DNA of 64,000 nt. It comes from Selaginella moellendorffii. Its lineage: Eukaryota; Plantae; Lycopodiophyta. Made by a program: the position numbers and the translations under genes. Of this stretch, positions 1 to 62,207 are shown piece by piece. The stretch lies in assembly GCF_000143415.4 (NCBI RefSeq), contig NW_003314345.1, positions 514,574 through 578,573 of the forward strand. Direction: 5' to 3'. The notes under the pieces are model-generated. The model saw nothing but the letters and a program-made list of their open reading frames with translations, was not told where the DNA came from and searched no databases. Position 1 is the first letter of the stretch. Every line of letters begins with the position of its first letter.

Positions 1-60
1 TTCCCTCTATATTTGAACCTCATGGATCGTCTTTCAAGTTATTCTCATTGGTTGCTTACA
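1..60 (-). repeat. Part of the 3' LTR of the chimeric element
   Basis: ttccctctatatttgaacctcatggatcgtc...ggttgcttaca is near-identical to 3157-3216 and to the right end of the solo LTR 25448-25642. Confidence 0.9.
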
Positions 61-263
61 ATTCACCACGCTTCCCTACAAGTTCATGCCCTCATGAACG
101 GAAGTTGAGAGCCGTAGCTGTCCTGAGAGCCCTACTCTCTTGACACCCTACCCCTCGGGTCGAGCCCAGTGGGAGCAAACTGGACTAGTCAGATGTCAAT
201 CAACATATGGTGTGATTCCCCTAGCCAACTAACAGAGTTAGACCCGAGACCACTTCGATACCA

Positions 264-2963
264 TCTTCCCTTTTCCCGTTTGGTCCATTAAGGGCTGGGT
301 TACTTTCGAATAGTGTTTGATAAACTTTCGGTAGTAGTTGCATAGCCCCAAGAATGCCCTTAACTTGTGTACATTCGATGATCGCTCCTAATCCTGGATC
401 ACTGGACCTTCTCAAGGTCCACCTTGAGCCCATCTTTGCCCATCACATGCCCGAGAAACTTTACCTTTTGTTGAGCAAAGTCACATTTGCTCTCTTTAGC
501 ATACAACTGGTATTCCCTTAGTTTCTCAAACACCTTCTTCAAGTGTTTGGCATGCTCCTCTAGCGTTTCGCTATAGATCAGGATGTCGTCGATATAGATG
601 ACCATAAAGTGATCTAGATAGGGTACAAAGATGTGGTTCATCAACGCTAAAAATGTTTCCGACGCGTTGCATACCCCGAAGGGCATCACCAGAAACTCAA
701 AGCTCCCAGACCTTGTTCAATAGGTTGTCTTCTCGACATCTTCCTCTGCTACCTTGATTTGGTAGTATCCTGACCTTAGGTCAATTCTCGAGAAGTATTT
801 TGCCTTTCCCAACCTATTGAATGGGTCCTCAATCTTTGGCAAAGGGTACTTGTTCTTCTTTGTATACTTGTTGAGAAACGTGGTAGTCTATGCACATGCG
901 TATAGATCCATCTTTCTTTTTCATAAATAACACCGGTGCCCCATATGGTGACTTGCTCAACCTAACATACCCTTTGTCCACCAACTCCTCTAGTTGGCGC
1001 TTGAGATCCTCGAGTTCTTTCTCGTTCAAACGATAGGGGGGACGAACCACCGCCTAAGTACCCTCGACCAGCTCAATCTTATGTTCTATCGGTCGTGCGG
1101 GGGGCAACCCTGCCGGTAGCTCCTCCGGCATGGTATCCTGGAATTGGTCCAACACCCGCTGGATCACTAAAGGTACTTCTTCCGTTCCTGTCTTTTTATC
1201 ACTCTTCACCGAGAGTAAGCATAAAAATGCTGCCTTAGTTCCTTTAGTGAGTTGTCCTCTCATGGACACTAGGTTTAAGTAGGAATCTTTGGCCTTGCTT
1301 TGCCCTACCTTTAGATCCTAGGCCTCCACCCTAGATCTTCTTCTTTGGGCATTCGCTAGTACCACAAGGTTTCTACCTTGTCCATGTAGGGCTACCACGA
1401 ACCGATTGAACCAATCCATTCCAAAGATCATGTCAAATCCTGCAATGTCCAACATGGTGAAATCCATGTCCACTTTCCATGTCCCTACTTTGACTCTCGC
1501 TTGTCGAAGTACCTCATCGGTGCTTTGGCTACCTTGAACAAACTCTATAGTCTTTGGTTCACCCAGCCGCTGCACCATTAGTCCGGTTTGCCAGACTATG
1601 TCTGCAGCCACAAAATTATCTGAAACACCCGTGTCAATAAGGATCTTAACAAAGCTACCTCCGAGCTTCCCTCGGAGGGCTAGTAGATGTCACGAACAAC
1701 TCTCTACCAAAGTTGCTCGTGTAATGAGTAACTTTGAGTTAGGGACTGAATCACATACCTCAGTTTGGACTTCACCCAACTTGGTGGCTATATTGGCTCT
1801 GGCCTTCTTCGGGTAGGGACATTCCCTTGAAAAGTGTCCTGCTTCACCACAGTTGTAACATACGTTGTTTCCCACGCTGCTCTACGACTTGACCTTCTTA
1901 TCCATGGGTTTGTCTCTTTTCGCTTGACTCCCCCACGTACTCGCTCGTTGGCCACCGGATTTGCCTTTCCAGAACCCCGAGGACTCATTCTTAGAGAAAC
2001 TCCTCTTGAATTTCCCTTTGCTATACGTTCCCCTTGGCTTGGCCCCTTTGCTAAACGTGGACCACGACCCCGACCCCGTCGTGTTCCCCTTTCACAGATT
2101 ATCATTGAAATGCACCTTAATGGCCGCATCCGACACTTCCTTGTAGTTGGGCAGGTTCCACTGCATCACCTCACTGCGAGCCCAGGTTTGCAAGCTTGAT
2201 ATAAAGGCATGGAACACATCCATATCACCCATATCCGTGACCAGTATCCTCTTTACTATAAATCCATTCACATACTCTTGAATGGTTCCGATCTACTTCA
2301 GCCTACTCAGCTCATCCCTTAGGTACATAGTAGCATTCGGAGGAACGTATGTCACGCAGATCCTCGCCTTCCATTTCCCAAGTGGCCACCAGTCCTTCGT
2401 TGGCCTCCGTCGTTCTCCACCAAAACTTGGCATTATCTGCCAAGTATGGTTTTGCACATGGGACCTTCTCCGAGCTTGGTAACCGCAATGTTCGGAAGTA
2501 GTCCTCCATATCATAAAACCAATCCTCCACCACCTTATAGTCGTTCACTCCTTTGAAGACTGATGGGGGCTTTGGTTTGTACTTGGGAACTGCCTGAGGG
2601 ACTAATTCCACTTCAGTCTGTTTGACCTTGTTTGGTTCTGCCTCAGTCCCTACCAAAGGGTCCGCACCTTCTGCGCTATCAGCATCTGTAGTCTTTCGCT
2701 TTTTCTTCCGGTTTTCGTCACACTTTAACTTGCGTACGAAAATCTCCAGCAGAGCATTGGTTTTGTGCCAATTGCCCTTCTAGAACGTCCAATCGAGCCT
2801 TGGACGACCGAACCTCGCCACCAGACTCCTGTTTGGAAGTTTCCTCACTAGAGTCCTCCTCATGCAAGGATTCCTCATACATGGCCTCTTTTTCAACCGG
2901 AGGCTCTAGCTCTGGCGGGGGTTCTGTCTCCGCCTTGGTTCGTTTCTGCCCTGCCTTCGCCAT
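264..2963 (-). pseudogene. Ty3/gypsy (chromovirus-like) gag-protease-reverse transcriptase, frameshifted, truncated in the RT thumb
   Basis: Retrotransposon gag (VEDWFYDMEDYF...AKFWW), CCHC knuckle CYNCGEAGHFSRECP, aspartic protease ILIDTGVSDNF, RT motifs [43 protein letters not shown], then LRAFLGLCNYYRKFIKHYS ending at ~264. Several stops and frameshifts. Confidence 0.93.
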
Positions 2964-3007
2964 CTCCCAGCAATCCCGCTCTATCCTTCGCTAGAACTGA
3001 GGAAAAG

Positions 3008-3019
3008 GCTCCGATACCA
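3008..3019 (-). promoter_or_regulatory. Primer binding site (tRNA-iMet type)
   Basis: TGGTATCGGAGC lies 3 nt downstream of the LTR terminal CA and differs at one base from the canonical plant iMet PBS TGGTATCAGAGC. Confidence 0.9.
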
Positions 3020-3022
3020 AAT

Positions 3023-3216
3023 TGTAAGTTCTTAAGTTTGGACTTCCCGGGATGTCACCTAGCCTAGTACTATTCAAACCCAAGGATGCTTAACCCTAAA
3101 TATCCCAAGACCCTTAACCAATTGGAAAAGGGGGTGCACTCTTATTCATGGGCCCTTTCCCTTTATATTTGAACCTCATGGATCGTCTCTCAAGTCATTC
3201 TCTTTGGTTGCTTACA
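3023..3216 (-). repeat. 5' LTR (194 bp) of Cassandra-type family
   Basis: TGTAAG/CTTACA terminal inverted repeats, same length and sequence family as 24321-24514 and 25448-25642. Confidence 0.92.
3040..3094 (-). promoter_or_regulatory. 5S rRNA-derived Pol III internal control region (Box A-IE-Box C) inside the LTR
   Basis: GTTAAGCATCCTTGGGTTTGAATAGTACTAGGCTAGGTGACATCCCGGGAAGTCC aligns without gaps to the plant 5S segment GTTAAGCGTGCTTGGGCGAGAGTAGTACTAGGATGGGTGACCTCC(C/T)GGGAAGTCC (recalled consensus, about 45-46 of 55 identical by hand). Confidence 0.88.
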
Positions 3217-3375
3217 GCCAGTGGCCTAACGCAAAGATATAAGTACTCCACCAGTTAGCATGGAATGGAACTTATGCTTAGACCCAAGCCAGACAAGAAC
3301 AAGAACAGGCACGCAAACGAGAGCTAGATTATGCCTCAAGTTGGTCAGCTATACCCAACCTACCCACTATCCCTA

Positions 3376-3968
3376 TTATACATTTGGAACCCCCTATAAA
3401 AACCCCCTTACCGTCCCTTCCTTGAGGAACACATGCTTTGGGATTTCACACTAAGTGTCCCTTAGTAACAGTCTCTAAGACAAGCTTGAAAGTTACTAAA
3501 TATGGAATGTCCCTAGATTGCGAATTTCGACACGAGATGAATACCATTGTGTTTAAGACAATCTTTACATTCCATAGATATGTCAAATGAGCAAATTTAG
3601 GCACTTTCCACAAATAACATTTGGGACCAGAATAAGAATAACACAAAAGGCATGATAGCAAGGGTGTTTGGCAGACACAGTAAACTATCATTTAGTGAAT
3701 ATTGAGGGACCAAGCTTAATATTGTGGGGGTTCTTGATACTAACAAGTACAAGCTAATGACACAAGTTTCTCAAACTAGGCTAAGTATGCTCAACAAAAA
3801 ACACATAGGGTTCCTACCTTATGTTTATCCAATTTAAGTGCATAGTCATTGACCAATTTCTCAACTAGCTCAAGTGGGAATTGATAATGGGTCTAGCAAT
3901 ATCAACCTCCTAACGTCGTGGCAGTAATAAAAGAACATTTGAAAGGACCCAAAATCACATTTGCGACA
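3376..3968. repeat. Dispersed ~0.6-kb repeat, copy 1 (unclassified decayed element)
   Basis: Collinear with 27113-27697 (shared tttggaacccc, ttaagacaatctttacattccatagatatg, atcatttagtgaatatt, aatcacatttgc). Confidence 0.75.
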
Positions 3969-3969
3969 T

Positions 3970-5002
3970 TGAGATAGAGATAGAGTTCTCTAAGTTGTAC
4001 AGTTTTTGGAGTTTTGGATTGTCTATGATCCTGTCGGGAGGTATGAAGAGCTCACCAAGGAGCTCCAAAGCTTGGGTGGTTTTGCTCAAAATCTTACATT
4101 ATTTTCGCCATCCAAGGTATGTATAGTTTTCCTAAAGTTTTCTTCTTGGATAAAACTAAAGAACTTTATAACTAGATCAATGTTTTCTTGGGAATCACAA
4201 GCAAGAGACCTAATGGCTACTATGATTTAATATCTCTCTTTCATGTAAGCTTCTGGGTTTTTTTCTAGTTTCTCAAGAAACTTTTCACTCAGGTGATTAG
4301 CCGGGGAGATACTTTAAAGTTTTTAGTCTTTCCTTCTAAAAAGAAAGACTCACAACAAATGTGTTTGGAATCCCACTCGATGACTCAAACTTGGTAAAAC
4401 TATCCATTCATTTGTTTCTGAGGATTTACATAACATTTGTATGATTCTTTTGCAAGGTGATCACAGCTCTAAATCTTTATAAAAAGAAGACTGGGAGTGA
4501 CACATACTTTTGGGTAAGCTCTCAATAACTTTCTTCGATCAAAGCATTTAGTTTTTCTTCTTAAGGTTCATTTGGACAAAAGAGTTTCAAGTGGTGCTAG
4601 CCTTGGAGGTGGCAATATTAATGCTACCACTGTTCTCTGGGCCGCAAACTAGATAAATGGAAACTTTGCTAGTGAAGCGGATCTACAAGAGTCTGCAGAG
4701 ATCGGCTCTGATATTCCTTTTGTTTTCTCGTATGGAGCAGCCTGTTGCATTGGCTGTGGAGAGGTAAACTTAGAAAAAAGATAATTTTTTGCTTGACAAA
4801 ATAAACAACAAGCGCAATTACGGTCAACACATTTGCATGTGACACATGTAACAGTAGTCACCTCCCATTGACTGGGAGCAAACATTAACATAATTATTCA
4901 CTAAGACATGGTTAAAGAAATAACAATTTTACAGTTACCCCCTATCGGACAGCTGCCATTGGCTGGATCCAGCAGCCCAGAAAGTTCAGCACTATTATGA
5001 TA
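3970..5002 (+). pseudogene. ISPE: ISPE/CMK (4-diphosphocytidyl-2-C-methyl-D-erythritol kinase) gene fragment, copy 1
   Basis: Exon remnants IVYDP...LTLFSPSK / INVFLGITSKRPNGYYDLISLFH / VITALNLYKKKTGSDTYFW / VHLDKRVSSGASLGGG...AAN* / EIGSDIPF, with introns retained, an in-frame stop and a frameshift. The C-terminal half is missing. Confidence 0.85.
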
Positions 5003-5943
5003 GATGTTCATTATTTTAATAATATATATACTACTCATTTAAGTTATTTTTAAAACTGATGTTTTGATATTAATAATAGATAAATTGATAACAGTTGACA
5101 TATTTTAGCAAAGATTTATATGACTTAGCAGTTGATCAAATATTCAAAGGAATCCAAGTGTAACAACTTAAATTGACTGAAGTATAACTGCTGATGAGGA
5201 TAATTTAAATACCATGCTAATCATCCTGTCCAGCACAATCATGAGCATAGCACAGCGCCTTCTTCCTTGTGGTGGGCTCTATTTGTCTTATATATAACAT
5301 TGTTCCAGAATTATGTGCCTTAACAATATTTTCTTGACAAAAGATGCTTCACACATATCCACTTAGTAAATTGGAAAAGCAATTGATTTAGGAATTTGTA
5401 AATTTATAATTCTCAGCCTTAGAAAAAATGAGTTTGGTAGAAGGCTTTGCCATCAACCTAATGCACTTTCTGTATTAGATTAATAAAATGGCAAACAAAG
5501 TATAGCATTATTTTGATAAGCTTTAAAACACATAATTAAAGTGATTGAAGTCTAGTTAATGAGAAGTAAACTAAGAGTTTATGAATGACTTTTTGCTTTG
5601 TACATGCTTCCCTGGATTCAGCAGACTATGTTTTTAGCACAGTCTTTGCTGCTACAAGTCTTGGTGACTTGCGAGGTGTGATCGTGCCATAAATTTCTTG
5701 TTTCGTTCATCGGTTCTTTACGAGAAACAATTTCTGAAGCTGTAAGATTGTGAGAAACACCAATTTGAAATACTATATATATGTCATGATTACCGCTCTG
5801 CAAAGGGAAGGAAAAAACCACGCACCTTTTCTTCCTCTTTCTCCACGTACTCGAGAAAAGCCTCAAATCGTTCGTCAGGTTTCTTGAAAAGCCATTTGTA
5901 ATACATCTCTCTGTCCTCAAAATTCTCCCGCACAACATCAGTC

Positions 5944-6330
5944 ATACTTCAGCCGATGTGGATTGCCCAGCCATGGCAAGGAGCAGCAGCAGCGTGATCT
6001 TCCTGAGCATCTCCCAGTAATAGCTTGTCCACGCAATCCCGGAATGCCTTGATGCTACGCTCGTTTCTCGCTGACGCGAACAGCACCGTCCCAGCTCTCC
6101 CCAGCATACTCGTCGACGCCCCAGACGCGAGTGAATCCAAGAAGGTGAATGCCCACATTGTGTACCATGGCCAAGATCCTGCGCACCAAGCTCTCCAAGG
6201 CACAGCCATAGCTGCGCACTTGCCCGATCAAATGCCACACGTCCACCACCTCCATTCTGCCCTAGCATACTCCACCAAGGAGCAAGCAATAGATAAGTTC
6301 GTACAAAACTGTAAAATAGAAGCCGCTTAA
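5944..6330 (+). pseudogene. GC-rich coding-like fragment of unknown family
   Basis: Protein-like ORF tail LRSFLADAN...VNAHIVYHGQ...AAHLPDQMPH...VQNCKIEAA, with stops just upstream. Family not recognised. Confidence 0.35.
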
Positions 6331-6497
6331 ACAAACAAAAGTGTGGTTGAGTTTTCGCTTTTTGTCTCTTGTGTTTATAACTGAGTTAGTGGTCTAAACC
6401 ACCATGCCGTCGGATGACGATCGTGCGGTCCCTGACGATTCTAGGGCGCCACTGCCTCCATATAAGAGGGTTTCAAGATAGGGTTTCAGCTAGCAAA

Positions 6498-8824
6498 ATG
6501 GACGAGAAATTGACTAAGGTGGAAGCTCAAATCGGGCTTCTTGAGCCCCAGATCCAAGCGGCTGGGGAATCTTTTCTCTCTGCCCTTCAGAGTGGCAATC
6601 AATCTCTGGCGGAATATTGGCGGAAGGAGGAAGAGCAGCTGTGGAAGGAGGAAGAGCAGCTGCGGAAGAAGGGAGAGCAGCTGCGGGAGCAAAAACTCCT
6701 CCTCCTCAGAAGTAATGGTAAGTCATTTGGGGCGTGTGTGTTGTGGATATGTGTGCTTCCATGTGGCTATGGCTGCTTTCGGCCATGGTTAAGGATTTTG
6801 CCTGAGGTAGTTTCAATTCGCTTTTATTTTGGGTTGCTGGAAGTGTGGCTAGTTGCTGCTGGCGGGCGCATACTCCCTTGTGGATCCTTGTTTATGGCTA
6901 TGGCTGTTGAGACCCTTGATTCTGGCCATGTTTTCTATTGATAGTTTTTTCTTCCAGATCTAATACTAACTTTGTTATGTTCTGAATGTTACAGTGTCCC
7001 ATGGAATCCGCGGATCTGGTAAGCAATTGTGAAAGCCCTTTGTTTCCTTGCATGTCCCCCCTGTTTTCTCTTTGATCTGTGATGTCGGAAGTCCCAGTTT
7101 TTGTCCAGTTCTTGGTATTCCTGGTGAGGTCTTGCTTCTGATGGCGTCGCTGTTGGATTTGGTCTTGGCTTGTGGTTGTAATTGAATTCATGGCCATCTG
7201 CTTGGTATGTGGCCCCTTGCGTTCTATTAATGCTGTCTGTGTCTTCTTCGGCTTAGAGCTCTTCCCCCTGGGATGACTGTTTTGCCGTCGTTTGAAGTTT
7301 TCCTGCCTCACACTAGAGTTTACTCAGTTCTCCTCACAGAGCGGTATTTGCCTGCTTGTAGCACTTCCTGTCTGATCCGTGCATTCGTATCTTTCTTCAG
7401 GTGTACCAGATGGTGTGGCGGCCCTTGTAAGGGCTACTGATACTCCAGATTCTAAATTCTGGATTTTAGATAGCGATGCACTGCGAAATTATGACAAACC
7501 TTTCCTGCTATGGAAACGAAAGGCGTATGCGAGTCTAGAATCCAAAATCCAGGAGCGGCTCAGCAACTTCACTTCCTTCATCGTCCTAGGCACTGCAGGG
7601 ATAGGGAAATCGTTCTTTGGCTATCACTGGATTATTAGGCTGGGCCAAATGGGGCAAGAAAAGGCGTTATACAAGGTTGGCGAGGTTGTTTACATCCTGA
7701 ATTTGCGAAGCCGATATGTTGAAGGTGGTTATGACGTGAATGGCCAAATTATACGCCAAATGCTGGACGATCCGTCAATGTGGCTAGTGATAGATGGGCA
7801 GCAGGAGACGCCTTTACCTGGCAAGTGTCGAGTTCTTTTGGTTTGCTCATCTAACAAGACAAACTACGATGAGTTTGGCAAGGGGGGACTTTGTTGCATG
7901 CTTTATATGTCGGTGTGGTCCAGGGAGGAGATTGGGAAATTCCTTGACGACTTTGAGCCTTACCGAACTAGTTACAGGAACATGAATGTGGTGGACAGAA
8001 AGGAAGGGCTTGACAACTTCGATTATTTGGGTGGAGTTCCTAGGTATGTACTGCGTGCAACAAAGGTGAACGAGGGGAAGTCCAGCGCCCAGAGTGCGGT
8101 TGAGTCGTTCGGATCAAGTGTATCCAAAGCGGCTAAAATTTTGTCAGGAGGGTACGTGAAAAATGTCAGTGACTGCATTCTGCACATCGTGGCAACTGAG
8201 GACCACAGCGAAATGACATATCAGTTTGCAAGCGAGGCTTTGATGACAGAGCTTGGGAATCAGTATCTGCGTGCTGGAGCTGTGCCTGTGGTGGGATTTC
8301 TGCAAGAAACATTCAGCTGCCCTTGGGTGGGGGCTCTGTGGGGGAAGCTTTATGAGCCTCTTGTGCATAGGCTACTGTTGAAGGGTGGTGATTTTGTTAT
8401 CAAGGCAGTTTATGCTAATGGAAGCTCCGATCCTGAGACTTCCGTTCATATTGGACCTCATATCATGCTGGAGGCAAGTTCTGCGGGTGAGTTTGGAGGA
8501 AAGATGGGGACGGGCAAGTACGTGCAACCAACTTCTGAAGTCTTTCCGAGCATTGATTCTGGTATGGATGAAGACATTCTCATTCAGGTCTTCAAGAGAA
8601 TGGATGGAAAACACAGCTTTGAAGCGAGTGGCTTAGAAATGGTGGATGCTGCGTTGAAGAGACCAAGCTACAGGTTGTGGTCGTGTGTTCCAAAAGAGAC
8701 GTTTCCGCGAACTGGATGGCAGCAATACAAGAATAATAATGATGGAGACTATGGGAGTGGAAATGCAGTATTTGGGAAGATGCGGCAGTTTGTTGTTCAA
8801 GTGGACTACGAGGATGCACGATGA
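6498..8824 (+). CDS. Crinkler/RHS (CR)-type protein: coiled-coil header + P-loop NTPase + PD-(D/E)xK-like nuclease (~547 aa, exons 6498-6717 and 7401-8824)
   Basis: Header KEEEQLWKEEEQLRKKGEQLREQK. A phase-1 GTAAGT...TTCAG intron joins the two ORFs in frame. Walker A GTAGIGKS, Walker B WLVIDG, LYMSVWSREE, F.YLGGVPRYV, FAS, G.LYEPLVH and YVQPTSEVFPSIDS...LIQV are typical of CR NTPase+REase proteins. Confidence 0.8.
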
Positions 8825-9339
8825 AGCTTCTGTTTTTTTTATATATATACTTACAATATAAATTTCTCAGTAAATCAAAGTTTTTAATACAATACTGGAA
8901 ATTGCCCAGCAAAAAGCAGGTGGGGGAAGTACTTTAAATCTGAGCTAAAAAAGACAAATACATTGGCCAAGAGTTTTATGTCACAAGTATTATAGCTTTG
9001 AGATTTGAGCATTTCGTATTATAGCTTCGAGATTTGAGCATCATGGTTTCGTTGCCAGTATTAAAATAAAACTGTTAAGTTCAAAGCATAAGAATACTAA
9101 TCATTGTGTTATGTGATTTTTAGTTTGCATTTTTTTTTCTTTTCCTGTTGGATAACAAAGGAAAAACTTTTGGTGAGATTTTCTTTTCTTCCACAAATGG
9201 AAGCATGATACTTATTCTCAATTGGAGCAAATTATCTCAACCTAGAAGCTGCCTAAACTTTGGGAAAGAAGACACGAACATCACTTTTGACATAATTTAA
9301 ATATTATTTTTCCATATTTTTACATATTGTACAGTGTTA

Positions 9340-10492
9340 TGAGCTTGGCGCTATAGCTTTCTCCACTGCAATGGCGGTCTTTTCTCAATTGCTTCCTTCT
9401 GCAACACCAGGGGCAGAAATGCTGAGGTGATGGAGCTCGAATCCTTTGTGTGGCTTGTGAGGTGTGGCTCTACTGTGAGCTTGAGCTCTAGCATCCTCAG
9501 TGTTGATGGTGAACACTACTGAGTTTTTGGTGTTGTCCTTGCTCTTGCTACCATTGTTGTAGTCTTGGCTGTCCTTAAAGTTTGTGTCCCATGTGCTGTT
9601 CTTGTAGGAGATGGCTGTGTCACTGAGACAAGAGCGTGCTTGTTTCTCGATCACTTCCTCAGACTTGTGCAGGGCAGTGTGAACCACAAGCTTCTTCTCT
9701 TCATCTTTGATTTCCAGGATGTCTTTGAGGAGGAGGAACACCTCATTTGATCTTAGTAGACTGCAATGGTTGCCTGGAACCCTATGCCTCGCAGTCGCAG
9801 TGAACCCAACATCCTATGAAGAAAGCAGAGTTCAGAACTGGGTGATAGAAATAGAGGGCTACCTTGGAAGACTTGGATGGTACTGTGCCATCTCCATCCA
9901 CATACTTGAAATCGGCCTCCAAAGTCCAAAGTTTCTTTGAGTAAGCATGAAGAAAGAACTCCACATTACCTTGAGCTCAACTATGAGGCATTTTTTCACT
10001 CCCGTAGCTGGAAACAATGGAAAAACGTTGCCAATGAAAGTTGGCTATCAAGAACGAAGAACACATACCAGACATGAAATGGAGTTTTGCATGAACTGCC
10101 ATAGATGTTGTAGAATTTAAAATCTTTTGGAAGTTTTGCAATGAACCATAGACAGTAGGACTCATTTGCCCACTCAAGAATGCATCTTATTGAAAGGAAT
10201 GGGTATTGTCTTGTCATCATAGCTCAGCTGCATAGAAAATATTTAGTTTACCAGCATAACCAAAGAAAAGAAAAGAGAATTGATATACCATTAACCATGT
10301 TCTCTTTAAGTGCAACTTCCATCTCAAAAACACACTCAATAGGTCCATATGAGTGTATCTATTTTCTTCTCCTTTGTCTTGTTTCTTCCTCATCGTGCCT
10401 ATCATGGCTCCTAGATAAAAATCAAGCTGGAAATTGGAGAGAGAATCCATGGCAAGTCCATCACTCCATTTTGCCGATTCAGCAAGCAATTT
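9340..10492 (-). pseudogene. LCAT3/LCAT4-like phospholipase A, 3' gene fragment
   Basis: ILEWANES...AKLPKDFKFYNIYGSSCKTPFHV, YGSEKMP, YVDGDGTVP and VFLLLKDILEI match the C-terminal half of plant LCAT3/4. Introns retained, frames broken. Confidence 0.8.
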
Positions 10493-10525
10493 GATAGGCA
10501 GTTTTGCTTCATTTCGAGGGCCTAA

Positions 10526-11675
10526 ATGCAGGAGATGGAGCTGCTTGAGAGCTGGCTCCAGAAAACTCGAGGTAAAGGTCTTGAGATAGATATAGAGTTC
10601 TTTGAGTTGTACAGTTTTTGGAGTTTTAGATTGTCTATGATCCTGCCAGGAGGTATGAAGAGCTCACCAAGGAGCTCCAAAGCTCGGGTGGTTTTGTTCA
10701 AAATCTTGCATTATTTTTGTATGTATAATTTTCCCAAAGTTTTCTTCTTGGATAGAGCTAAAGAACTTTATAACCAGATCAATGTTTTCTTGGGAATCAC
10801 AAGCAAGAGACCTGATGGCTACCACAATTTAACATCTCTCTTTCATGTAAGCTTCTAGGTTTTTTTTCTTGTTCTAGTTTCTTGATTAGCCGGGGAGATA
10901 CTTTAAAGTTTTCAGTCTCTCCTTCTAAAAAGAAAGACTCACTTACAACAAATGTGTTTGGAATCCCACTTGACAACTCAAACTTGGTAAAACTATCCAT
11001 TCATTTGTTTCTGAGGATTTATAAAACATTTGTGTGATTCTTTTGCAAGGTGATCAAAGCTCTAAATCTTTATAGAAAGAAGACCAGGAGTGACACATAC
11101 TTCTGGGTAAACTCTTAATAAACTTTCCTCGATCAAAGCATAAACTGTTCTTATCATATAAAAAGATAGTTCTAAAGAGTGAAAGTAGCTACATAACACT
11201 TGCAGTTTTTCTTCTTAACATTCACTTGGACAAAAGAGTTTTAAGTGGTGCTAGCCTTGGAGGTGGCAGTGGTAATGCCACCATTGCTCTCTAGGCTGCA
11301 AACCAGATAAATGGAAATCTTGCTAGCAAAGTGGATCTACAAGAATGGTCTGCGGAGATTGGCTCTAATATTCCTTTCATTTTCTTGCATGGAGCAGCTT
11401 GTTGCACTGGCCGTGAAGAGGTAAAATTAGATAAAAGATTAATTTTTTGCTTGACAGGACAGATGACAAGTGCAGTCACGGTCAACACATTTGCATGTGA
11501 CACATGTCACAACTCCTTCTTCTCTCACCCCATGCAGTTTGGTCACCTGGGAGCAAACATTAGCATGATTATTCATTAAGACATGGTTAAAGAAATAACC
11601 CTTTTATAGTTACCCCCATCGATGGCTGCCATTGGCTGGATCTGACAGCCTAGAAAGTTCAGCACTATTATGATA
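10526..11675 (+). pseudogene. ISPE: ISPE/CMK gene fragment, copy 2 (direct repeat of 3970-5002 plus one more upstream exon)
   Basis: INVFLGITSKRPDGYHNLTSLFH, DLQEWSAEIGSNIPFIFLHGAACCTGREE. Collinear with copy 1 up to gaaagttcagcactattatgata. Confidence 0.85.
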
Positions 11676-23738: not shown

Positions 23739-24514
23739 TGTAAGTAACTAAAGGGAACGATTTGAGAGACGGTCCATGGGGTTCAAATATAGAGGGAAAG
23801 GGCTCATGAATAAGAGTCCTTTCCAATCAGTTAAGGGTCTTGGGGTTAATCGTCCTTGGGTTTGAATAGTACTGGGCTAGGTGACCTCCCGGGAAGTCCA
23901 AACTCAAGAGCTTACATTTGGTATCGGAGCGGTCTCGGGTTTGAATAATACTGGGCTGGGTGACCTCTCGGGAAGTCCAAACTCAAGAGCTTACATTTGG
24001 TATCGGAGCGGTCTCGGAAACTCAAGAGCTTACATTTGGTATCGGAGCGATCTCGAGTCCGACTCCCTTGGTTGGCTAAGGGAATCACACCACATGTTGA
24101 TTGACATCTGGTTGGTCCAGTTCGCTCCCGCTGGGCTCGACCCGAGGGGTAGGGTGCCAAGAGAGCGGGGCTCTCGGGAGAGCTATGGCTCTCAGCTTCC
24201 ATTCATCCCGGGAAGTCCAAACTCAAGAGCTTACATTTGGTATCGGAGCGGTCTCGGGTCGGGCTACGGCTCTCAGCTTCCGTTCACGAGGGCGTGAACT
24301 TACAGGGAAGCGTGGTGGATTGTAAACAACCAAAGGGAACGATTTGAGAAATGGTTCATAGGGTTCAAATATAGAGGGAAAGGGCTCATGAATAAAAGTG
24401 CATCCCCTTTTTCAATCGGTTAAGGGTCTTGGGATATTTGGGGTTAATCGTCCTTGGGTTTGAATAGTACTGGGCTGAGTGACCTCCCGGAAAGTCCAAA
24501 CTCAAGAGCTTACA
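23739..24514 (+). mobile_element. Cassandra-type TRIM, tandem-array form with four PBS copies and a 5-bp TSD TCAAG
   Basis: TCAAG 23734-38 | LTR 23739-23916 | PBS 23919-30 | LTR 3' fragment 23937-95 | PBS 23998-24009 | LTR end 24018-34 | PBS 24037-48 | internal ~24049-24205 | LTR end 24206-35 | PBS 24238-49 | short internal | PPT 24304-20 | LTR 24321-24514 | TCAAG 24515-19. The 5S core is present in both full LTRs. Confidence 0.92.
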
Positions 24515-25447
24515 TCAAGGTCAAAGATAGGGTCATATACCAAGTTTATTTTCTATTACTCAGTTTGTTACTATATGTTGCCATGTATAGTTACATCGTC
24601 TGGCAGACTCAGTCTTCATTCTTTATGGCAATGGCCATATACATGCATATGTGGGGGATGATCCTAAGACCTAACATTGGCAACTCTTGGCAATTATGAA
24701 AGTAAGCTCAACTGTATTGGTAATATTGAATCATGCTTATATAGAAGTTTTTATAGTGAAGCATTAATGAAACTTTATACAAAACAAAGAGATAACAAAT
24801 AACCATCCTAATCTGAATGTTGAAAGTTCCTTTAAAGATTAAACAAGTTGTTCCACCAAACCATTTATCTGTGGATAATAAGCACTCATGAAAATGTGGC
24901 ATATCCCCAAATATGAAATGCCTCAATCATAAATATAGAACTATTATTTGAAAAAATTTACTCAGAATAAAATGTTGGAACATCACTCAATTGAGGAGGA
25001 GGTATCCAACAACAATCATTGATGCACTAGCAAGAATATCAACTTCCATCTAGTGAGTCAAGTAGTCAGAGGTAATAATAATGTACTCATTGCTAACAAT
25101 TAACTATGGAAAAAGCCCTATCATATCAAATGCCACTAACTCAAATAAGTGGGAAATTGCAATCAACTCCAACTATCCTTCTACAGCACAAAGGGGAGTA
25201 TTATGAGCTTGGCACCAAACACAATTATATATATACGAGATAACATCATATTACTTTTCTGACCTATATAAAGTTTCTCAATAATATACTAATGTCCTTT
25301 ATACCCCTATAAAATAGGAGAGTCATAATAAGTATGGAGAAGGTATGAAATAAATATCAAAGGCACCACCATATGTAAATGATCATCAAGATCAATCCTA
25401 ACAAAATAAAGAAGGTTGTCTAAAATGATAAGTCATCAACAAGTGAT

Positions 25448-25642
25448 TGTAAGTTCCTGAGTTTGGACTTCCCGGGAGGTCACCCAACCCAGTACTATTC
25501 AAACCCAAGGACACTTAACCCCAAGTATCCCAAGACCTTTAATCGATTGGAAAAAAGGGTGCACTCTTGTTCATGGGCCCTTTTCCCTCTATATTTGAAC
25601 CCCATGGATCATCTCTCAAGTCGTTCTTTTTGGTTGCTTACA
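25448..25642 (-). mobile_element. Solo LTR of the Cassandra-type family with 5-bp TSD GTGAT
   Basis: GTGAT 25443-47 | TGTAAG...CTTACA (195 bp) | GTGAT 25643-47. No adjacent PBS or PPT. Confidence 0.93.
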
Positions 25643-26430: not shown

Positions 26431-27022
26431 GATGAAGTAAAAAATTTGACTCAACACCACCTATAATGATTGAAGTTTAAACTTTAAATATCTCACATAC
26501 ACAGTTAGGTCTGCCTTATCTCATACACATGTATGTATATGATCATTGCTATAAACAATTGAAGACTAGTTTTACCACATAACACAACTGGAAATGGAAA
26601 CATGTGGCAACAGACTGAGCAATAGAAGATAAACTCAAGCTTGTATCAATCAACATGGAGAGAATAATAAAAGACCTTTTGATATAAAAATAAGTTTTAG
26701 AAAGTAAACATTGGATGAACTAGTGCTAAGTGAACCCCTTGATGGTACTCTTTAGAAAAAGATGGAGGGGTCATTGACTTATTCGCGCAAACACATTTCA
26801 CTATATGTGTGACTCTTCATTTCTTAAAAAAATCTTTATGTCAAGACCTTCCACTATAGCAATACTAATAGGTCATTGTTGACACCAAAGCTTTCACCTA
26901 GAAAATAGAGGAATCTAGAAAATGCCAACAATGCTAATATATATGGTCAACCTCATCACACATTTAACAACAAATGTGTAGCACATATGGTTTTCATTCT
27001 TTATCCTATAGTGGTTTTCCAT

Positions 27023-27111
27023 AATCGGTAAAGGGTTGGGATATTACATCCTTAAGTTTGAATAATATTGAGCTAAGTGACTTCTTAGGAAGTCTAAATT
27101 CAAAAGCTTAC
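27023..27111 (+). repeat. Decayed 3' fragment of Cassandra-type LTR
   Basis: ccttaagtttgaataatattgagctaagtgacttcttaggaagtctaaattcaaaagcttac is the LTR 5S core with mostly G>A and C>T changes. Confidence 0.75.
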
Positions 27112-27112
27112 G

Positions 27113-27697
27113 ACTATATATTTGGAACCCCCCATAACTTCCTTGTTAAGGAATGCACACTTTGGGCTTTCACTCCAAGTCACAGTTAGTACTAGGAGTT
27201 GGTCTTCAGGATAAACTTGAAACTTACTAGTTAAATTGCAAATTTGGATATGGGAACAATACCATCGTATTTAAGACAATCTTTACATTCCATAGATATG
27301 CCAAATTAGTAGATCTAGACACTTTCCATAATAGCAATTAGAACCAAACATGACTAACACAAAGGGCATAATAGCAAAGTGTTTAATAGATATGGTAAGT
27401 TATCATTTAGTGAATATTAAAGGACCAAACTAGGGGTTCTTAATACTAGCAAGTGCAAGTCAATAAATAAGTTTCTTTAATCAAATCATGTATGTTTGAC
27501 TAATAACATTAAAAAATTTGTCCTTATGCTCTTATAGCCAAGAGTACATGCAAAGACCAATTCCTTAACTAGCTCGAGTGGAGATTAAAAAAGGGTTTAG
27601 CAATATTAACCTCTTGCTATCATAGCAATAAAGAAAGAATATTCAAAAAGACTAAACAATAAATAACTTTCAATACTTGCAATCACATTTGCTACAA
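27113..27697. repeat. Dispersed ~0.6-kb repeat, copy 2
   Basis: Collinear with 3376-3968. Confidence 0.75.
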
Positions 27698-36871: not shown

Positions 36872-37106
36872 TATAAACAACTAAAGAAAATAACTCAAAA
36901 AATGATTTTTTGAGGTTCAAATATAAAAGAAAAAGGCCCATGAATAAAAAAGAGAATGACTTGGATGACAATTCATTAAAATTTAAATATAAAAGGAAAG
37001 GGCCCATAAACAAGAATTCACCCTCTTTTCCAATCAGTTAAAAGTTTTGGGATATTTGAGGTTAAATGTATTTAGGTTGGGGTGGGTCCAAATTCAAAAG
37101 CTTATA
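36872..37106 (+). repeat. Highly decayed Cassandra-type LTR with internal duplication and eroded 5S core
   Basis: tataaacaactaaag...gaggttcaaatataaa...aaagggcccat...ttttccaatcagttaa...gggatatttgaggttaa...tccaaattcaaaagcttata follows the LTR 24321-24514. Confidence 0.7.
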
Positions 37107-39411: not shown

Positions 39412-41475
39412 ATGCTATGGCGGCATTTGCAGCCGCTGAGGAAGAAGCGAGCCCTAGCGGCAGCGGCCGTGGACATTCTTGCGCAGCGCAATCCTGCGCC
39501 CAGATCTTTGCCGCCATGGCCGGATCACGGCGGCGACCACGGCGGCGATCGCCAGCAGCCTCGCGCCCAGGTGAATGTCATCCACATCTTCGCGTCTCTC
39601 CTCCGGAAATGCGACTCCCCAGCGGCGCTGGAGCACGGCAAGCGCATCCACGCACAGCTGATCGCGGCGTGCCCCCAAAATCTCTCCCAGAATCTCTCCA
39701 TGGCAGTGCTGCTCATCAGAATGTATGGCAAGTGTGGCAGCCCCGGCGATGCCAAGGCCGTCTTCGACGATCTGTGCGTCAAGGACGGGAGATTGGCAAG
39801 AGAGATCTCGCTCTGGAACAGCCTCCTCACGGGATTCGTCCACAATCGCAAGAACAAGGAGGCGCTGAGGGTCTACAAGGAGCTGTGTGATCGCGGCAGG
39901 GATCTAGATCTAGAGCCAAGCGCCGGGACATTGGTCCAGGCGCTGGTGGCGTGCTCTAGCCTGCGTGATCTCGGCACTGGCAAGGCGATCCACTCGCGGG
40001 CGATCGCGCTGGGCTGCGATCGCCAGGTTGCCGTGGGCACGACGCTCATCGACATGTATGCCAAGTGTGGATGCATCGAGGAGGCGCGGCGGATCTTCGA
40101 GAAGATGGAGTCGCGGACGCTGGCGACCTGGAACGCGATGCTCGCTTGCTATGCCCAGAATGGGCATCTGGAGGAGACGATGGGGCTCTACCGGAGGATG
40201 GCGATCGAGGGCGTCGCCGGCGGCGCGGATGCGTGCACGCTCTCGATCGTCCTCAGCGTTTGCAAGCTCGGGGATGCGCGCCAGATCCACGCGCGCGCGA
40301 TCGTGAGTGGATTGGAATCCCACGCGGTCGTGGGCACCGCGCTGGTTCGATCGTATGGGCGATGGGGGAGCGTGGGCGAGGCGATGGCCGCGTTTGATCA
40401 AGTGGAGAGCAAGGATGTGGTGTGCTGGACGGCGATCATGGCCGTGCTGGTCGCCCGGGGATTGCCCGATCGAGCAGTGGAGCTCTACCGGGGCGCGATC
40501 GCGCGGGGCGTGGAGCCGGATTGCTACACTCTCTCCACGATCTTGGGCGCTTGCCGGGATCTAGAGACCGGGCAGGAGATCCATCGCGTGGCCGCGGCTA
40601 GGGCTTGCGATCGCGATGCCGTCGTGGGCACGGCGCTGGTCGCGATGTATGGGCGATGCAAAAGGATCGACGAGGCCAAGAGGGCGTTCGATCGGATCCA
40701 GGGAAAGAATGTGGTGTCCTGGAACGCGATTCTAGCGGCGTATGCCGAGGCCGGATTGGATGCCGGGGTGTTGGAGCTCTTGGATTCGATCGATGTGGTG
40801 CCGGATGTGCTCGTCTTCTCCAAAGCCCTTGCGGCGTGTGCCAGTCTCGGGGATCTTGCCGTGGGGCGGCGGCTCCACGACTGGATCGTCGCCCAGGAGC
40901 TGGAATCCGAGACCACGGTGGAGAATGGATTGATCAGCATGTATGCGCGGTGTGGGAGCTGGGGTCGCGCAAAGGCAGTGTTTGCTCGGCGCGCTAGGGA
41001 CGATCCGGTGTCCTGGAACGCGATAATCTCCGCGGCGGCGCGATTCAATCAGCTGGATCTGGTGCTGGATCTTCTCCGGGAGATGAGCGGCGATGGCGTC
41101 GACGCGGGCGAGATCACATTCACGAGTGTCTTGCACGCTTGCGCCCACGCCGGCGTGGCGATGGAGGGCGTGGAGATCTTCAAGCTCGTGGAGGAATTTG
41201 GCTGCGAGGCGATTCCGGATCACTTCCACTGCCTGATCGATCTGTTTGGGCGGCTGGGGATGATGGAGGAGGCCGAGGCGCTCATCGATGGGATGCCATT
41301 CGAGCCGGATCTGGTGGCGTGGACGAGCTTGGCTGGGGCTTGCAAGCTCCACCGGGATCTCGATCGCGCGGCTCGCTGCGCTGAGAATGTGGCGGCGCTC
41401 AACATGCGTATCTCTGGGCCTTTTGTTCTTCTTTGCAGCATCTGGAACGATCCCGACGAAGAGATTCTCTCTTGA
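39412..41475 (+). CDS. PLS-class pentatricopeptide repeat protein with E domain (organellar RNA editing factor type), 687 aa
   Basis: Repeated MYGKCG/MYAKCG...A..FD...VSWNA motifs, HFHCLIDLFGRLG...MPFEPDLVAWTSLAGACKLH E-domain, no DYW. Confidence 0.93.
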   Translation: MLWRHLQPLRKKRALAAAAVDILAQRNPAPRSLPPWPDHGGDHGGDRQQPRAQVNVIHIFASLLRKCDSPAALEHGKRIHAQLIAACPQNLSQNLSMAVLLIRMYGKCGSPGDAKAVFDDLCVKDGRLAREISLWNSLLTGFVHNRKNKEALRVYKELCDRGRDLDLEPSAGTLVQALVACSSLRDLGTGKAIHSRAIALGCDRQVAVGTTLIDMYAKCGCIEEARRIFEKMESRTLATWNAMLACYAQNGHLEETMGLYRRMAIEGVAGGADACTLSIVLSVCKLGDARQIHARAIVSGLESHAVVGTALVRSYGRWGSVGEAMAAFDQVESKDVVCWTAIMAVLVARGLPDRAVELYRGAIARGVEPDCYTLSTILGACRDLETGQEIHRVAAARACDRDAVVGTALVAMYGRCKRIDEAKRAFDRIQGKNVVSWNAILAAYAEAGLDAGVLELLDSIDVVPDVLVFSKALAACASLGDLAVGRRLHDWIVAQELESETTVENGLISMYARCGSWGRAKAVFARRARDDPVSWNAIISAAARFNQLDLVLDLLREMSGDGVDAGEITFTSVLHACAHAGVAMEGVEIFKLVEEFGCEAIPDHFHCLIDLFGRLGMMEEAEALIDGMPFEPDLVAWTSLAGACKLHRDLDRAARCAENVAALNMRISGPFVLLCSIWNDPDEEILS

Positions 41476-62055: not shown

Positions 62056-62207
62056 AAATAAGCTCTCTCTTTTTTCTTCACATAAATCAAACCATATTAT
62101 TTTGATGATCAAAGCCACAACGTTTACAATGTTTAACGTTTAAGCCTACTATATGTTGATATCATTCATTCTATGATACCAAGCTTTTAGAAACTCCGAG
62201 CCATCGT

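What the first reader, a model, noticed from the sequence alone, without database searches (positions are those of the whole stretch)
1..3216. Cassandra TRIM / Ty3-gypsy chimera fused exactly at a PBS: possible record of the autonomous helper of 5S-carrying TRIMs
Seen: 5S-bearing LTRs flank PBS-gag-PR-RT. The pol frame (...LRAFLGLCNYYRKFIKHYSKVTQPLMDQTGKGK) breaks at 263 into TGGTATCGAAGT-GGTCTCGGGTC. That is a second PBS (10/12, G>A and C>T changes) followed by the same 11 nt that follow a PBS in the TRIM array (24250-24260), then the TRIM internal domain, PPT and LTR. Established: Cassandra elements are non-coding TRIMs with a 5S Pol III core that must borrow enzymes, and to my knowledge their autonomous partner is not settled. 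During reverse transcription, minus-strand DNA runs off its template at the PBS because R-U5 has been degraded. Inference: minus-strand synthesis on a TRIM RNA ended at its PBS, switched onto a co-packaged gypsy RNA inside RT, copied back to the helper PBS, and plus-strand transfer via the shared tRNA-iMet PBS gave two TRIM LTRs. This would name a chromovirus-like gypsy as the helper. Alternative: this is a deleted copy of an autonomous gypsy that itself has 5S LTRs, with the TRIM as its deletion derivative, which would also be notable.
Basis: partly seen in the sequence, partly recalled or inferred. Interest (0 to 1): 0.9.

Follow-up and report, generated by a model that had tools for sequence, protein, structure and literature searches.

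The report
Cassandra-like TRIM fused to gypsy genes
In the spikemoss Selaginella moellendorffii, one decayed insertion joins the ends of a tiny gene-less 5S-carrying retrotransposon to the gag, protease and partial reverse-transcriptase genes of a larger gypsy element, with both joins at tRNA primer-binding sites; it most likely records the two RNAs being copied in one particle, which is a lead, not proof, to the tiny element's unknown helper.

Summary
On the minus strand lie a 194-nt 5S-bearing LTR (3216-3023), ATT, an exact tRNA-iMet PBS (3019-3008), broken gag/zinc knuckle/protease/RT (to 264), a second, decayed PBS (263-252), a complete Cassandra-like internal domain and PPT, and the first 60 nt of a second LTR, cut by the window edge.

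The window is Selaginella moellendorffii scaffold GL377649.1.

Relatives of the coding part carry a different, non-5S LTR. This shows in 48 read contigs and in a 78%-alike contig from another run. That argues against an autonomous gypsy with 5S LTRs.

That native LTR shares with Cassandra only its last six bases and the PBS; in the related contig it also shares 12 of its first 14 bases.

Best reading (about 0.58): a recombinant cDNA made when minus-strand synthesis ran off a TRIM RNA at its PBS and switched onto a co-packaged gypsy RNA. It is a dead-end fossil.

The helper claim is an inference (about 0.45).

Not tested: the target-site duplication (outside the window), the native RT sequence at the join, and the copy number of the join.

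The scan has flagged many similar chimeras elsewhere in this genome. No paper found names a Cassandra helper, or reports Cassandra in lycophytes.

The parts
3023..3216 (-). 5' LTR of Cassandra type, 194 nt, TGTAAGCAACC...CTTACA. The 5S-like segment lies at 3113-3026.
   Evidence: 87-89% identical to the LTRs at 25446-25642, 24321-24514 and 23739-23916. Rfam 5S 23.1 bits, E 0.14. 86 read contigs run on into unlike flanks at 3216.
3020..3022 (-). Spacer ATT between LTR and PBS. This is the gypsy type; the TRIMs here have TT.
3008..3019 (-). Primer-binding site TGGTATCGGAGC (tRNA-iMet type), exact match.
2092..2963 (-). gag remnants in three frames, with stops. The 5' UTR and gag are 78% identical to L001 from 3028 onward.
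   Evidence: The closest protein is P0002, 71% identical, Pfam PF03732.
1816..1866 (-). gag zinc knuckle (CCHC).
   Evidence: Pfam zf-CCHC, E 3e-9.
1318..1680 (-). Aspartic protease (DTG site, RVP_2).
   Evidence: Pfam RVP_2, E 3e-9; translation.
399..1050 (-). Reverse transcriptase core (YIDD), in two frames with one in-frame stop.
   Evidence: Pfam RVT_1, E 2e-19. The best database relatives are only 55-59% identical.
264..390 (-). RT thumb (LGLCNYYRKFI...GKGK), cut short about where relatives read K.V.W.
252..263 (-). Second PBS, TGGTATCGAAGT, with two transitions. It marks the 3' join between pol and TRIM.
   Evidence: One junction-spanning 31-mer occurs in read contigs.
77..251 (-). Cassandra-like internal domain, complete and non-coding, with no T>=4 run.
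   Evidence: 86% identical to 24037-24206 and 24263-24320.
61..76 (-). Polypurine tract region GGGAAGCGTGGTGAAT.
   Evidence: Aligned to 24305-24320 of the TRIM.
1..60 (-). First 60 nt of the 3' LTR. The rest lies beyond the window edge.
   Evidence: 56/60 identical to 3216-3157.
3217..3221 (.). Flank next to the 5' LTR (GCCAG on the + strand), the candidate target-site duplication. The flank belongs to a repeat that in other copies runs on without the insertion.
   Evidence: loose end at 3243 in X2.

Best explanation
This is a recombinant cDNA made inside one virus-like particle from two co-packaged RNAs. One RNA came from a Cassandra-like, 5S-carrying TRIM. The other came from a high-copy Ty3/gypsy element, probably a chromovirus, that normally has its own roughly 1.1-kb non-5S LTR.

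Inferred steps:
1. tRNA-iMet primed minus-strand DNA on the TRIM RNA.
2. After the first jump, that DNA copied the TRIM U3, PPT and internal domain down to the 5' edge of the PBS, where the RNase H-trimmed template ends.
3. Reverse transcriptase then switched onto the gypsy RNA inside the RT thumb and copied back through RT, PR, gag, the gypsy PBS and its spacer.
4. Plus-strand strong-stop DNA from the TRIM PPT paired with the shared CTTACA-(A)TT-PBS stretch, which gave a TRIM LTR at each end.
5. The product was integrated once and has since decayed.

It cannot be copied as a TRIM is, because its interior is full of Pol III terminator-like T runs. It is therefore a fossil by-product, not a working element.

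Shown: the anatomy, both joins, the separate existence of both parents, and the shared LTR ends and PBS. Inferred: the order of events, co-packaging, and that this gypsy family supplies Cassandra's enzymes.
For: - Homology to the TRIM starts exactly at the PBS and covers a whole internal domain, the PPT and the LTR.
- The gypsy part starts at or before the other PBS. It is 78% identical to L001 from the shared CTTACA onward.
- Both visible LTR parts are Cassandra type, 56/60 identical.
- The native LTR of the gypsy family is not 5S-type. 48 contigs in run X1 run on with one consensus (agreement 0.94) at 3028. L001 has the same LTR end and no Rfam 5S match. A native-type solo LTR also lies in S. 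moellendorffii locus L006.
- The two families share ends...CTTACA plus a PBS matching at 11/12, and in L001 an LTR start TGTAAGGAACCAAC against Cassandra's TGTAAGCAACCAAA.
- The TRIM interior has no T>=4 run. The chimera interior has 8, the first of them 2 nt after the PBS.
- The Cassandra array at 23739-24514 shows repeated switching next to the PBS inside a single TSD.
- A junction-spanning 31-mer occurs in read contigs.
- Several frame breaks are private to this copy, so the coding part was more nearly intact when the join formed (table 4).
Against: - The TSD could not be checked, because the 3' end lies outside the window.
- The native RT sequence at 263/264 is unknown.
- A plain transfer on the PBS alone predicts the spacer TT, not the ATT seen.
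- No high-support loose end was listed at 264. Most loose ends were not shown, so this is weak either way.
- Earlier scan notes report dozens of Cassandra-gypsy chimeras in this genome. This copy could therefore descend from an older chimera that spread, rather than being a primary product.
- Co-packaging does not prove that the gypsy family is the helper. A third family's particle could have held both RNAs.
- The shared LTR start comes from a contig of another run that is 77-78% alike, not from S. moellendorffii itself.
Confidence: 0.58

Rival explanations
1. This is a descendant of an established chimeric family. An older Cassandra-LTR::gag-pol element, itself once formed by recombination, spread in the genome by read-through or Pol II transcription. 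This copy is a later derivative that lost the rest of pol, through a deletion or a second recombination with a TRIM.
For: - The scan lists 62 notes on Cassandra-chromovirus joins in this genome, with lengths from 3.7 to 7.8 kb. These notes are unchecked.
- One read contig in each of three runs joins the Cassandra LTR end (3023) to 2873 in gag. That is a second form of the LTR-gag link (table 5).
- Rice OsajLTRA10 has the same duplicated-PBS layout and was read as a working progenitor of its TRIM.
Against: - A T4 run lies 2 nt after the PBS, and 7 more lie inside. These should stop Pol III.
- Roughly half of the contigs that cover the 5' UTR run on into the native, non-5S LTR.
- The second PBS together with a whole TRIM interior is what a fresh switch at a template end predicts, not a random deletion.
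Confidence: 0.2
2. This is a DNA-level rearrangement. Separate insertions of a Cassandra element and a gypsy element were reshaped by ectopic or illegitimate recombination, gene conversion or break repair.
For: - Cassandra elements recombine often (pear).
- A 21-nt stretch, CTTACA-(A)TT-PBS, is shared by the two families and could support homologous exchange on the 5' side.
- The chimera sits in a repeat that shares a block with native-type gypsy LTRs, in the same orientation.
Against: - The 3' join has no homology, yet it falls to the base at the PBS edge.
- No single deletion or exchange turns a nested pair into LTR-PBS-gag-PR-RT-PBS-internal-PPT-LTR.
- Both LTR parts are of one type and alike.
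Confidence: 0.12
3. This is an assembly artefact. Sanger reads from a gypsy copy and a TRIM copy were joined at their shared PBS in the 2011 two-haplotype assembly.
For: - Both joins lie in a sequence that is shared by many repeats.
- The assembly is old, and the region is rich in repeats.
Against: - One of four sampled 31-mers that span 263/264 is present in the contigs of three 2024 runs.
- The second PBS carries two private changes, and the flanking sequence on both sides carries this copy's own changes.
- A mis-join at a 12-nt match is unlikely for 700-nt reads.
Confidence: 0.05

Closest known systems
Cassandra TRIMs (Kalendar et al. 2008; 'TRIMp3' of Kojima 2024, PMC10886601)
   Same: Short LTRs with a 5S rRNA-derived segment, a tRNA-iMet PBS, a PPT, a small non-coding interior, 5-bp TSDs and tandem arrays. 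All of these are seen in the window's TRIM copies.
   Different: - This insertion is over 3.3 kb and holds gag-PR-RT remnants.
- The 5S match lacks model positions 23-58.
- The host is a lycophyte, a group for which I found no Cassandra report.
- Whether it descends from the fern and angiosperm Cassandras or is a separate 5S capture is open.
Rice OsajRetroS10 / OsajLTRA10 (Gao et al. 2016, PMC4717578)
   Same: A large coding element with TRIM LTRs. Its coding part is flanked on both sides by a duplicated short stretch that holds the iMet PBS.
   Different: - The rice element is copia, intact (1,577 aa) and expressed, and was read as the TRIM's progenitor.
- Here the coding part is gypsy, cut inside RT and decayed.
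- Its relatives carry a different LTR, so capture is the better reading.
Recombinant LTR retrotransposons made by template switching (Sabot & Schulman 2007; soybean SNRE/SARE LTR swapping, Du et al. 2010; both cited in PMC4079214, and further cases in PMC10853983)
   Same: An exchange between two co-packaged RNAs during reverse transcription, integrated as one unit.
   Different: - Those cases join members of one family, or partners that already share LTRs.
- Here a Pol III-driven TRIM is joined to a Pol II-driven autonomous element.
- The two share only LTR termini and the PBS, and one join lies at the template end.
Plant chromoviruses (Galadriel and the unclassified Selaginella chromoviruses of Neumann et al. 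2019, PMC6317226)
   Same: Gypsy domain order, a tRNA-Met PBS, and no extra RNase H between PR and RT.
   Different: Integrase and chromodomain are absent from this copy. No RT tree was made. The RT core is at most 59% identical to anything found.

Membership tests
Cassandra / TRIMp3 | TRIM build: two short LTRs, PBS, PPT, a non-coding interior, and a total under about 1 kb | tested here: not met
   - The window's plain copies meet it. The unit is about 590 bp: 194-nt LTRs plus a 203-nt PBS-to-PPT module.
- The reported insertion as a whole does not. It is over 3.3 kb and holds coding remnants.
Cassandra / TRIMp3 | 5S rRNA-derived segment in the LTR | tested here: met
   Rfam 5S_rRNA gives 39.1 bits (gathering score 38) in the solo LTR at 25451-25538. 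The homologous stretch of the chimera's LTR gives 23.1 bits.
Cassandra / TRIMp3 | Working Pol III promoter boxes and terminator; transcription by Pol III | tested here: inconclusive
   - The match lacks model positions 23-58, while the box C region is well kept.
- The TRIM interior has no T>=4 run.
- No expression data were laid.
Cassandra / TRIMp3 | Common descent with the fern and angiosperm Cassandras | not tested
   No reference Cassandra sequences were at hand. Cassandra LTRs are only about 44% alike across plants (PMC10853983).
Ty3/gypsy chromovirus | gag, PR and RT in gypsy order, with RT of the Ty3/gypsy type | tested here: met
   Pfam zf-CCHC, RVP_2 and RVT_1 lie in that order with no integrase between PR and RT.
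Ty3/gypsy chromovirus | Chromodomain at the integrase C-terminus | not testable with these tools
   RNase H and integrase are missing from this copy, and no full-length relative could be fetched.
Ty3/gypsy chromovirus | PBS type of the lineage | tested here: met
   The PBS is an exact tRNA-iMet match. Neumann 2019 finds tRNA-Met in most chromoviruses and in no non-chromovirus.
Ty3/gypsy chromovirus | Placement in an RT/RH/INT tree | not tested
   No named reference domains were available. The nearest RT cores are 55-59% identical.
Reverse-transcription recombinant integrated as one unit | One target-site duplication around the whole unit | not testable with these tools
   The 3' end lies about 134 nt left of the window (scan note s1-420578). 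Attempts to fetch that DNA failed.
Reverse-transcription recombinant integrated as one unit | Joins at places that the replication cycle predicts | tested here: met
   The 3' join lies at the 5' edge of a PBS. The 5' join lies within the shared CTTACA-spacer-PBS stretch.
Reverse-transcription recombinant integrated as one unit | Both parents exist as separate families | tested here: met
   Plain TRIM copies lie in the window. Gypsy relatives with their own LTR appear in the reads and in L001.

The most novel reading that the evidence does not exclude
Cassandra-like TRIM RNA is routinely packaged into the particles of this one chromovirus family in Selaginella. The many differently built chimeras in the genome would be independent by-products of that packaging. 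The matching LTR termini and PBS would be the recognition signals the TRIM mimics. This would be the first identified helper of a 5S-carrying TRIM. It would also place such TRIMs in lycophytes, pushing their origin before the lycophyte-euphyllophyte split or showing a second 5S capture.
Probability: 0.4. Interest if true: 0.8.

Novelty: new variant of a known kind. Interest (0 to 1): 0.6.

Why it matters
Cassandra elements occur across ferns and flowering plants. They are copied by enzymes they do not encode, and reviews up to 2024 state that there is no indication of which autonomous family does this (PMC7215508, PMC10886601).

A cDNA that fuses a Cassandra-like RNA to a particular gypsy RNA at the points where reverse transcription stops and jumps is physical evidence that the two RNAs shared a particle. 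With the matching LTR ends and PBS, it gives a concrete, testable candidate. Test it by expressing this family's Gag-Pol and asking whether a marked TRIM moves.

It also documents a 5S-carrying TRIM in a lycophyte. A single decayed copy proves neither point, and the value lies in the genome-wide series.

Tried and rejected
- **Close relatives of the gag piece.** The full 1.84-billion-protein scan gave only P0002, 71% identical, from a 6-kb Logan contig (L001); all other hits were under 50%.
- **Close relatives of the RT piece.** The best hits were 55-59% identical. The metagenome scan also reached only 55%. Full-length polyproteins could not be reached because of the length window of the search.
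- **Other gag-pol copies in the window.** There are none.
- **Random sampling of 80 kb of other S. moellendorffii loci (L005, L006).** This gave Cassandra LTR fragments and one native-type solo LTR, but no gag-pol copy.
- **Fetching the DNA left of the window through neighbouring annotated genes.** The F-box gene reached only window 10249. P0272 and two ORFs of the window are not on record.
- **Findings search by sequence, spanning the join.** It was blank.
- **The direct-repeat pair 3969-5002 / 10581-11675.** I asked whether it shares Cassandra's ends and PBS. It does not.
- **Repeat X (3377-3948).** I asked whether it is the native LTR. Only a 46-85-nt block is shared with native-type LTRs, so this stays open.
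- **Rejected: the TRIM as a simple deletion derivative of this gypsy.** The gypsy 5' UTR and the TRIM interior are unlike from the first base after the PBS.
- **Not done.** No complex prediction was run, because no binding claim is made.
Full report
**Where the window comes from**

A PPR gene at 39412-41475 finds a Selaginella moellendorffii protein. The locus fetched for that protein, GCA_000143415.2 scaffold GL377649.1, is 100% identical to window 29412-51475. The window is therefore GL377649.1:514,574-578,573. The host is a lycophyte.

**Anatomy (minus strand)**

Reading from 3216 downward, the parts are:

- **5' LTR, 3216-3023 (194 nt).** It runs TGTAAGCAACC...CTTACA and is 87-89% identical to three other LTR copies in the window. 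Its 5S-like stretch (3113-3026) scores 23 bits against Rfam 5S. The same stretch of the solo LTR at 25451-25538 scores 39.1, above the gathering score.
- **Spacer and PBS.** The spacer is ATT. The PBS is an exact tRNA-iMet match at 3019-3008.
- **Coding remnants.** gag, a CCHC knuckle, an RVP_2 protease and an RVT_1 reverse transcriptase follow in gypsy order. They are broken by at least four frameshifts and eight stops.
- **The join.** The RT thumb ends at 264. Bases 263-252 read TGGTATCGAAGT, the PBS with two transitions. The next 11 bases equal those after a PBS in the TRIM array.
- **TRIM module.** Homology to the TRIM (84-86%) runs on through a whole internal domain, the PPT (76-61) and the first 60 nt of an LTR (60-1), where the window ends. 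Upstream of the second PBS there is no likeness to the TRIM.

The two LTR parts that can be compared are 56/60 identical, K2P 0.07.

**Is the join real?**

All thirty 31-mers of window 234-293 span 263/264. One of the four sampled is present in the contigs of each of three 2024 runs of one sample. This is weak support, but it does not depend on the 2011 Sanger assembly.

**What relatives of the coding part look like**

Read contigs laid at 85% likeness show a very large family: 18,000-41,000 short contigs over the 3.6 kb. They also show that this copy carries many private changes, with G/C-to-A/T changes in excess.

At 3028, 48 contigs of run X1 leave the window sequence with one consensus (agreement 0.94). 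On the element strand this reads ...AAATTGGAAAGGAAAAATTTGTGG, followed by the shared CTTACA-ATT-PBS. About 86-89 contigs cover the nearby 5' UTR, so roughly half run on into this non-Cassandra LTR.

The only close protein relative, P0002 (71% identical in gag), lies on Logan contig L001. There:

- The gypsy 5' UTR and gag (78% identical to 3028-1965) are preceded by ...AAATTGGAAAGGAAAAATTCATGG-CTTACA-ATT-TGGTATCGAAGC.
- Rfam finds no 5S.
- The LTR seems to start at 1687, where homology to a second, inverted gypsy copy stops. It starts with TGTAAGGAACCAAC, against TGTAAGCAACCAAA in Cassandra.

A native-type solo LTR also lies in S. moellendorffii locus L006.

So the gypsy family has its own long LTR. 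That LTR shares with Cassandra only the terminal bases and the PBS.

**Mechanism**

The 3' join sits exactly where a minus-strand DNA copied from a TRIM RNA runs out of template. That point is the 5' edge of the PBS: the R-U5 and spacer RNA beyond it has been degraded, while the PBS is protected by the tRNA. This is established retroviral and LTR-element biochemistry. A switch onto a second RNA in the same particle, followed by plus-strand transfer from the TRIM's PPT-primed strong-stop DNA, gives the observed order and two TRIM LTRs.

One detail does not fit the simplest form of this model. The spacer beside the 5' PBS is ATT, as in the gypsy. The TRIM has TT in the four PBS copies of the array and in one read contig. 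Three explanations are possible:

- The gypsy-derived strand reached into its own U5 (shared CTTACA), and a one-base bulge was resolved its way.
- The parent TRIM had ATT.
- A base was gained later.

The chimera is unlikely to have been a working element. The TRIM interior has no run of four or more T. The chimera's interior has eight, the first two bases after the PBS. Such runs stop Pol III, which drives Cassandra (Kojima 2024).

The TRIM array at 23739-24514 lies within one TSD (TCAAG). It has four PBS copies, each followed by 8-11 nt and a jump back into the LTR end. This shows that switching next to the PBS is common for this TRIM.

**Lineage of the gypsy part**

The order is PR then RT, with about 90 residues between them and no extra RNase H, so it is not TatI. 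The PBS is of the tRNA-Met type. Neumann et al. 2019 report that type in most chromoviruses and in no non-chromovirus. They also report Galadriel and unclassified chromoviruses in Selaginella. This is an inference from the literature; no tree or chromodomain could be examined.

**Helper claim**

Three things fit a parasite-helper pair: co-packaging (inferred), the matching LTR ends, and the same PBS. They do not prove it. The LTR start comes from a related contig, not from S. moellendorffii. tRNA-iMet PBSs are common. A third family's particle could have held both RNAs.

**Known and new**

- Reviews state that the helper of Cassandra is unknown.
- I found no report of Cassandra in lycophytes. 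Gao 2016 lists Selaginella TRIMs, and its SmoRetroS4/SmoLTRA4 pair has 104-nt LTRs, so it is a different family.
- Recombinants made by template switching are well known.
- Rice OsajLTRA10 has the same duplicated-PBS layout, read there as a progenitor.
- This scan has already flagged dozens of Cassandra-gypsy joins elsewhere in this genome, of varied build. I could not check them.
- One neighbouring note places the end of the TRIM part 134 nt left of the window. That would make the 3' LTR 194 nt, like the 5' LTR.

**Limits**

- The TSD, the native RT sequence at the join, the number of copies with this join, and the full native element in S. moellendorffii were out of reach.
- The read tool could be used once and printed only the best-supported loose ends.

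Noticed in passing
window 23739-24514: A Cassandra-like array lies inside one 5-bp duplication (TCAAG). It has two full LTRs and four PBS copies (23919, 23998, 24037, 24238). Three of the four PBS copies are followed by 8-11 nt of internal domain and then a jump into the LTR's last 62 or 17 nt (or, for the fourth copy, into the interior's 3' part); the third runs on through ~157 nt of interior before a jump into the LTR's last 30 nt. This looks like repeated template switching beside the PBS.
   Followed up: partly
window 25446-25642 (-): A solo Cassandra-like LTR with the TSD ATCAC. It is the only 5S-like stretch in the window that passes Rfam's gathering score.
   Followed up: partly
window 27015-27113 and 36874-37078: Old, strongly decayed fragments of Cassandra-like LTRs. 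Further fragments lie in other S. moellendorffii loci (L006 20019-20368 and 51747-51866).
   Followed up: no
window 3377-3948 and 27115-27652: A repeat, about 69% alike between its two copies, abuts a Cassandra LTR at both places. A 46-85-nt block of it (3455-3360) is shared with native-type gypsy LTRs (L001 2030-2120, L006 41615-41553). At the chimera it lies in the same orientation as the chimera. Its nature is unclear.
   Followed up: partly
window 3969-11675: Direct repeats of about 1 kb (3969-5002 and 10581-11675, 82-88% alike) enclose a 481-codon ORF (7379-8824) with a P-loop motif and no Pfam hit. The repeat ends and the sequence after the first repeat are not of the Cassandra/gypsy type.
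   Followed up: partly
L001 29-1686 and 1687-3839: In the related Logan contig, a gypsy copy with a ~1.1-kb LTR holding tandem ~24-nt repeats is inserted into the gag of an inverted copy of the same family.
   Followed up: partly
window 62171-63989 (-): Long ORFs made of degenerate glycine/serine-rich and histidine-rich tandem repeats (periods of 12-90 and 39 nt), with no Pfam hit.
   Followed up: no
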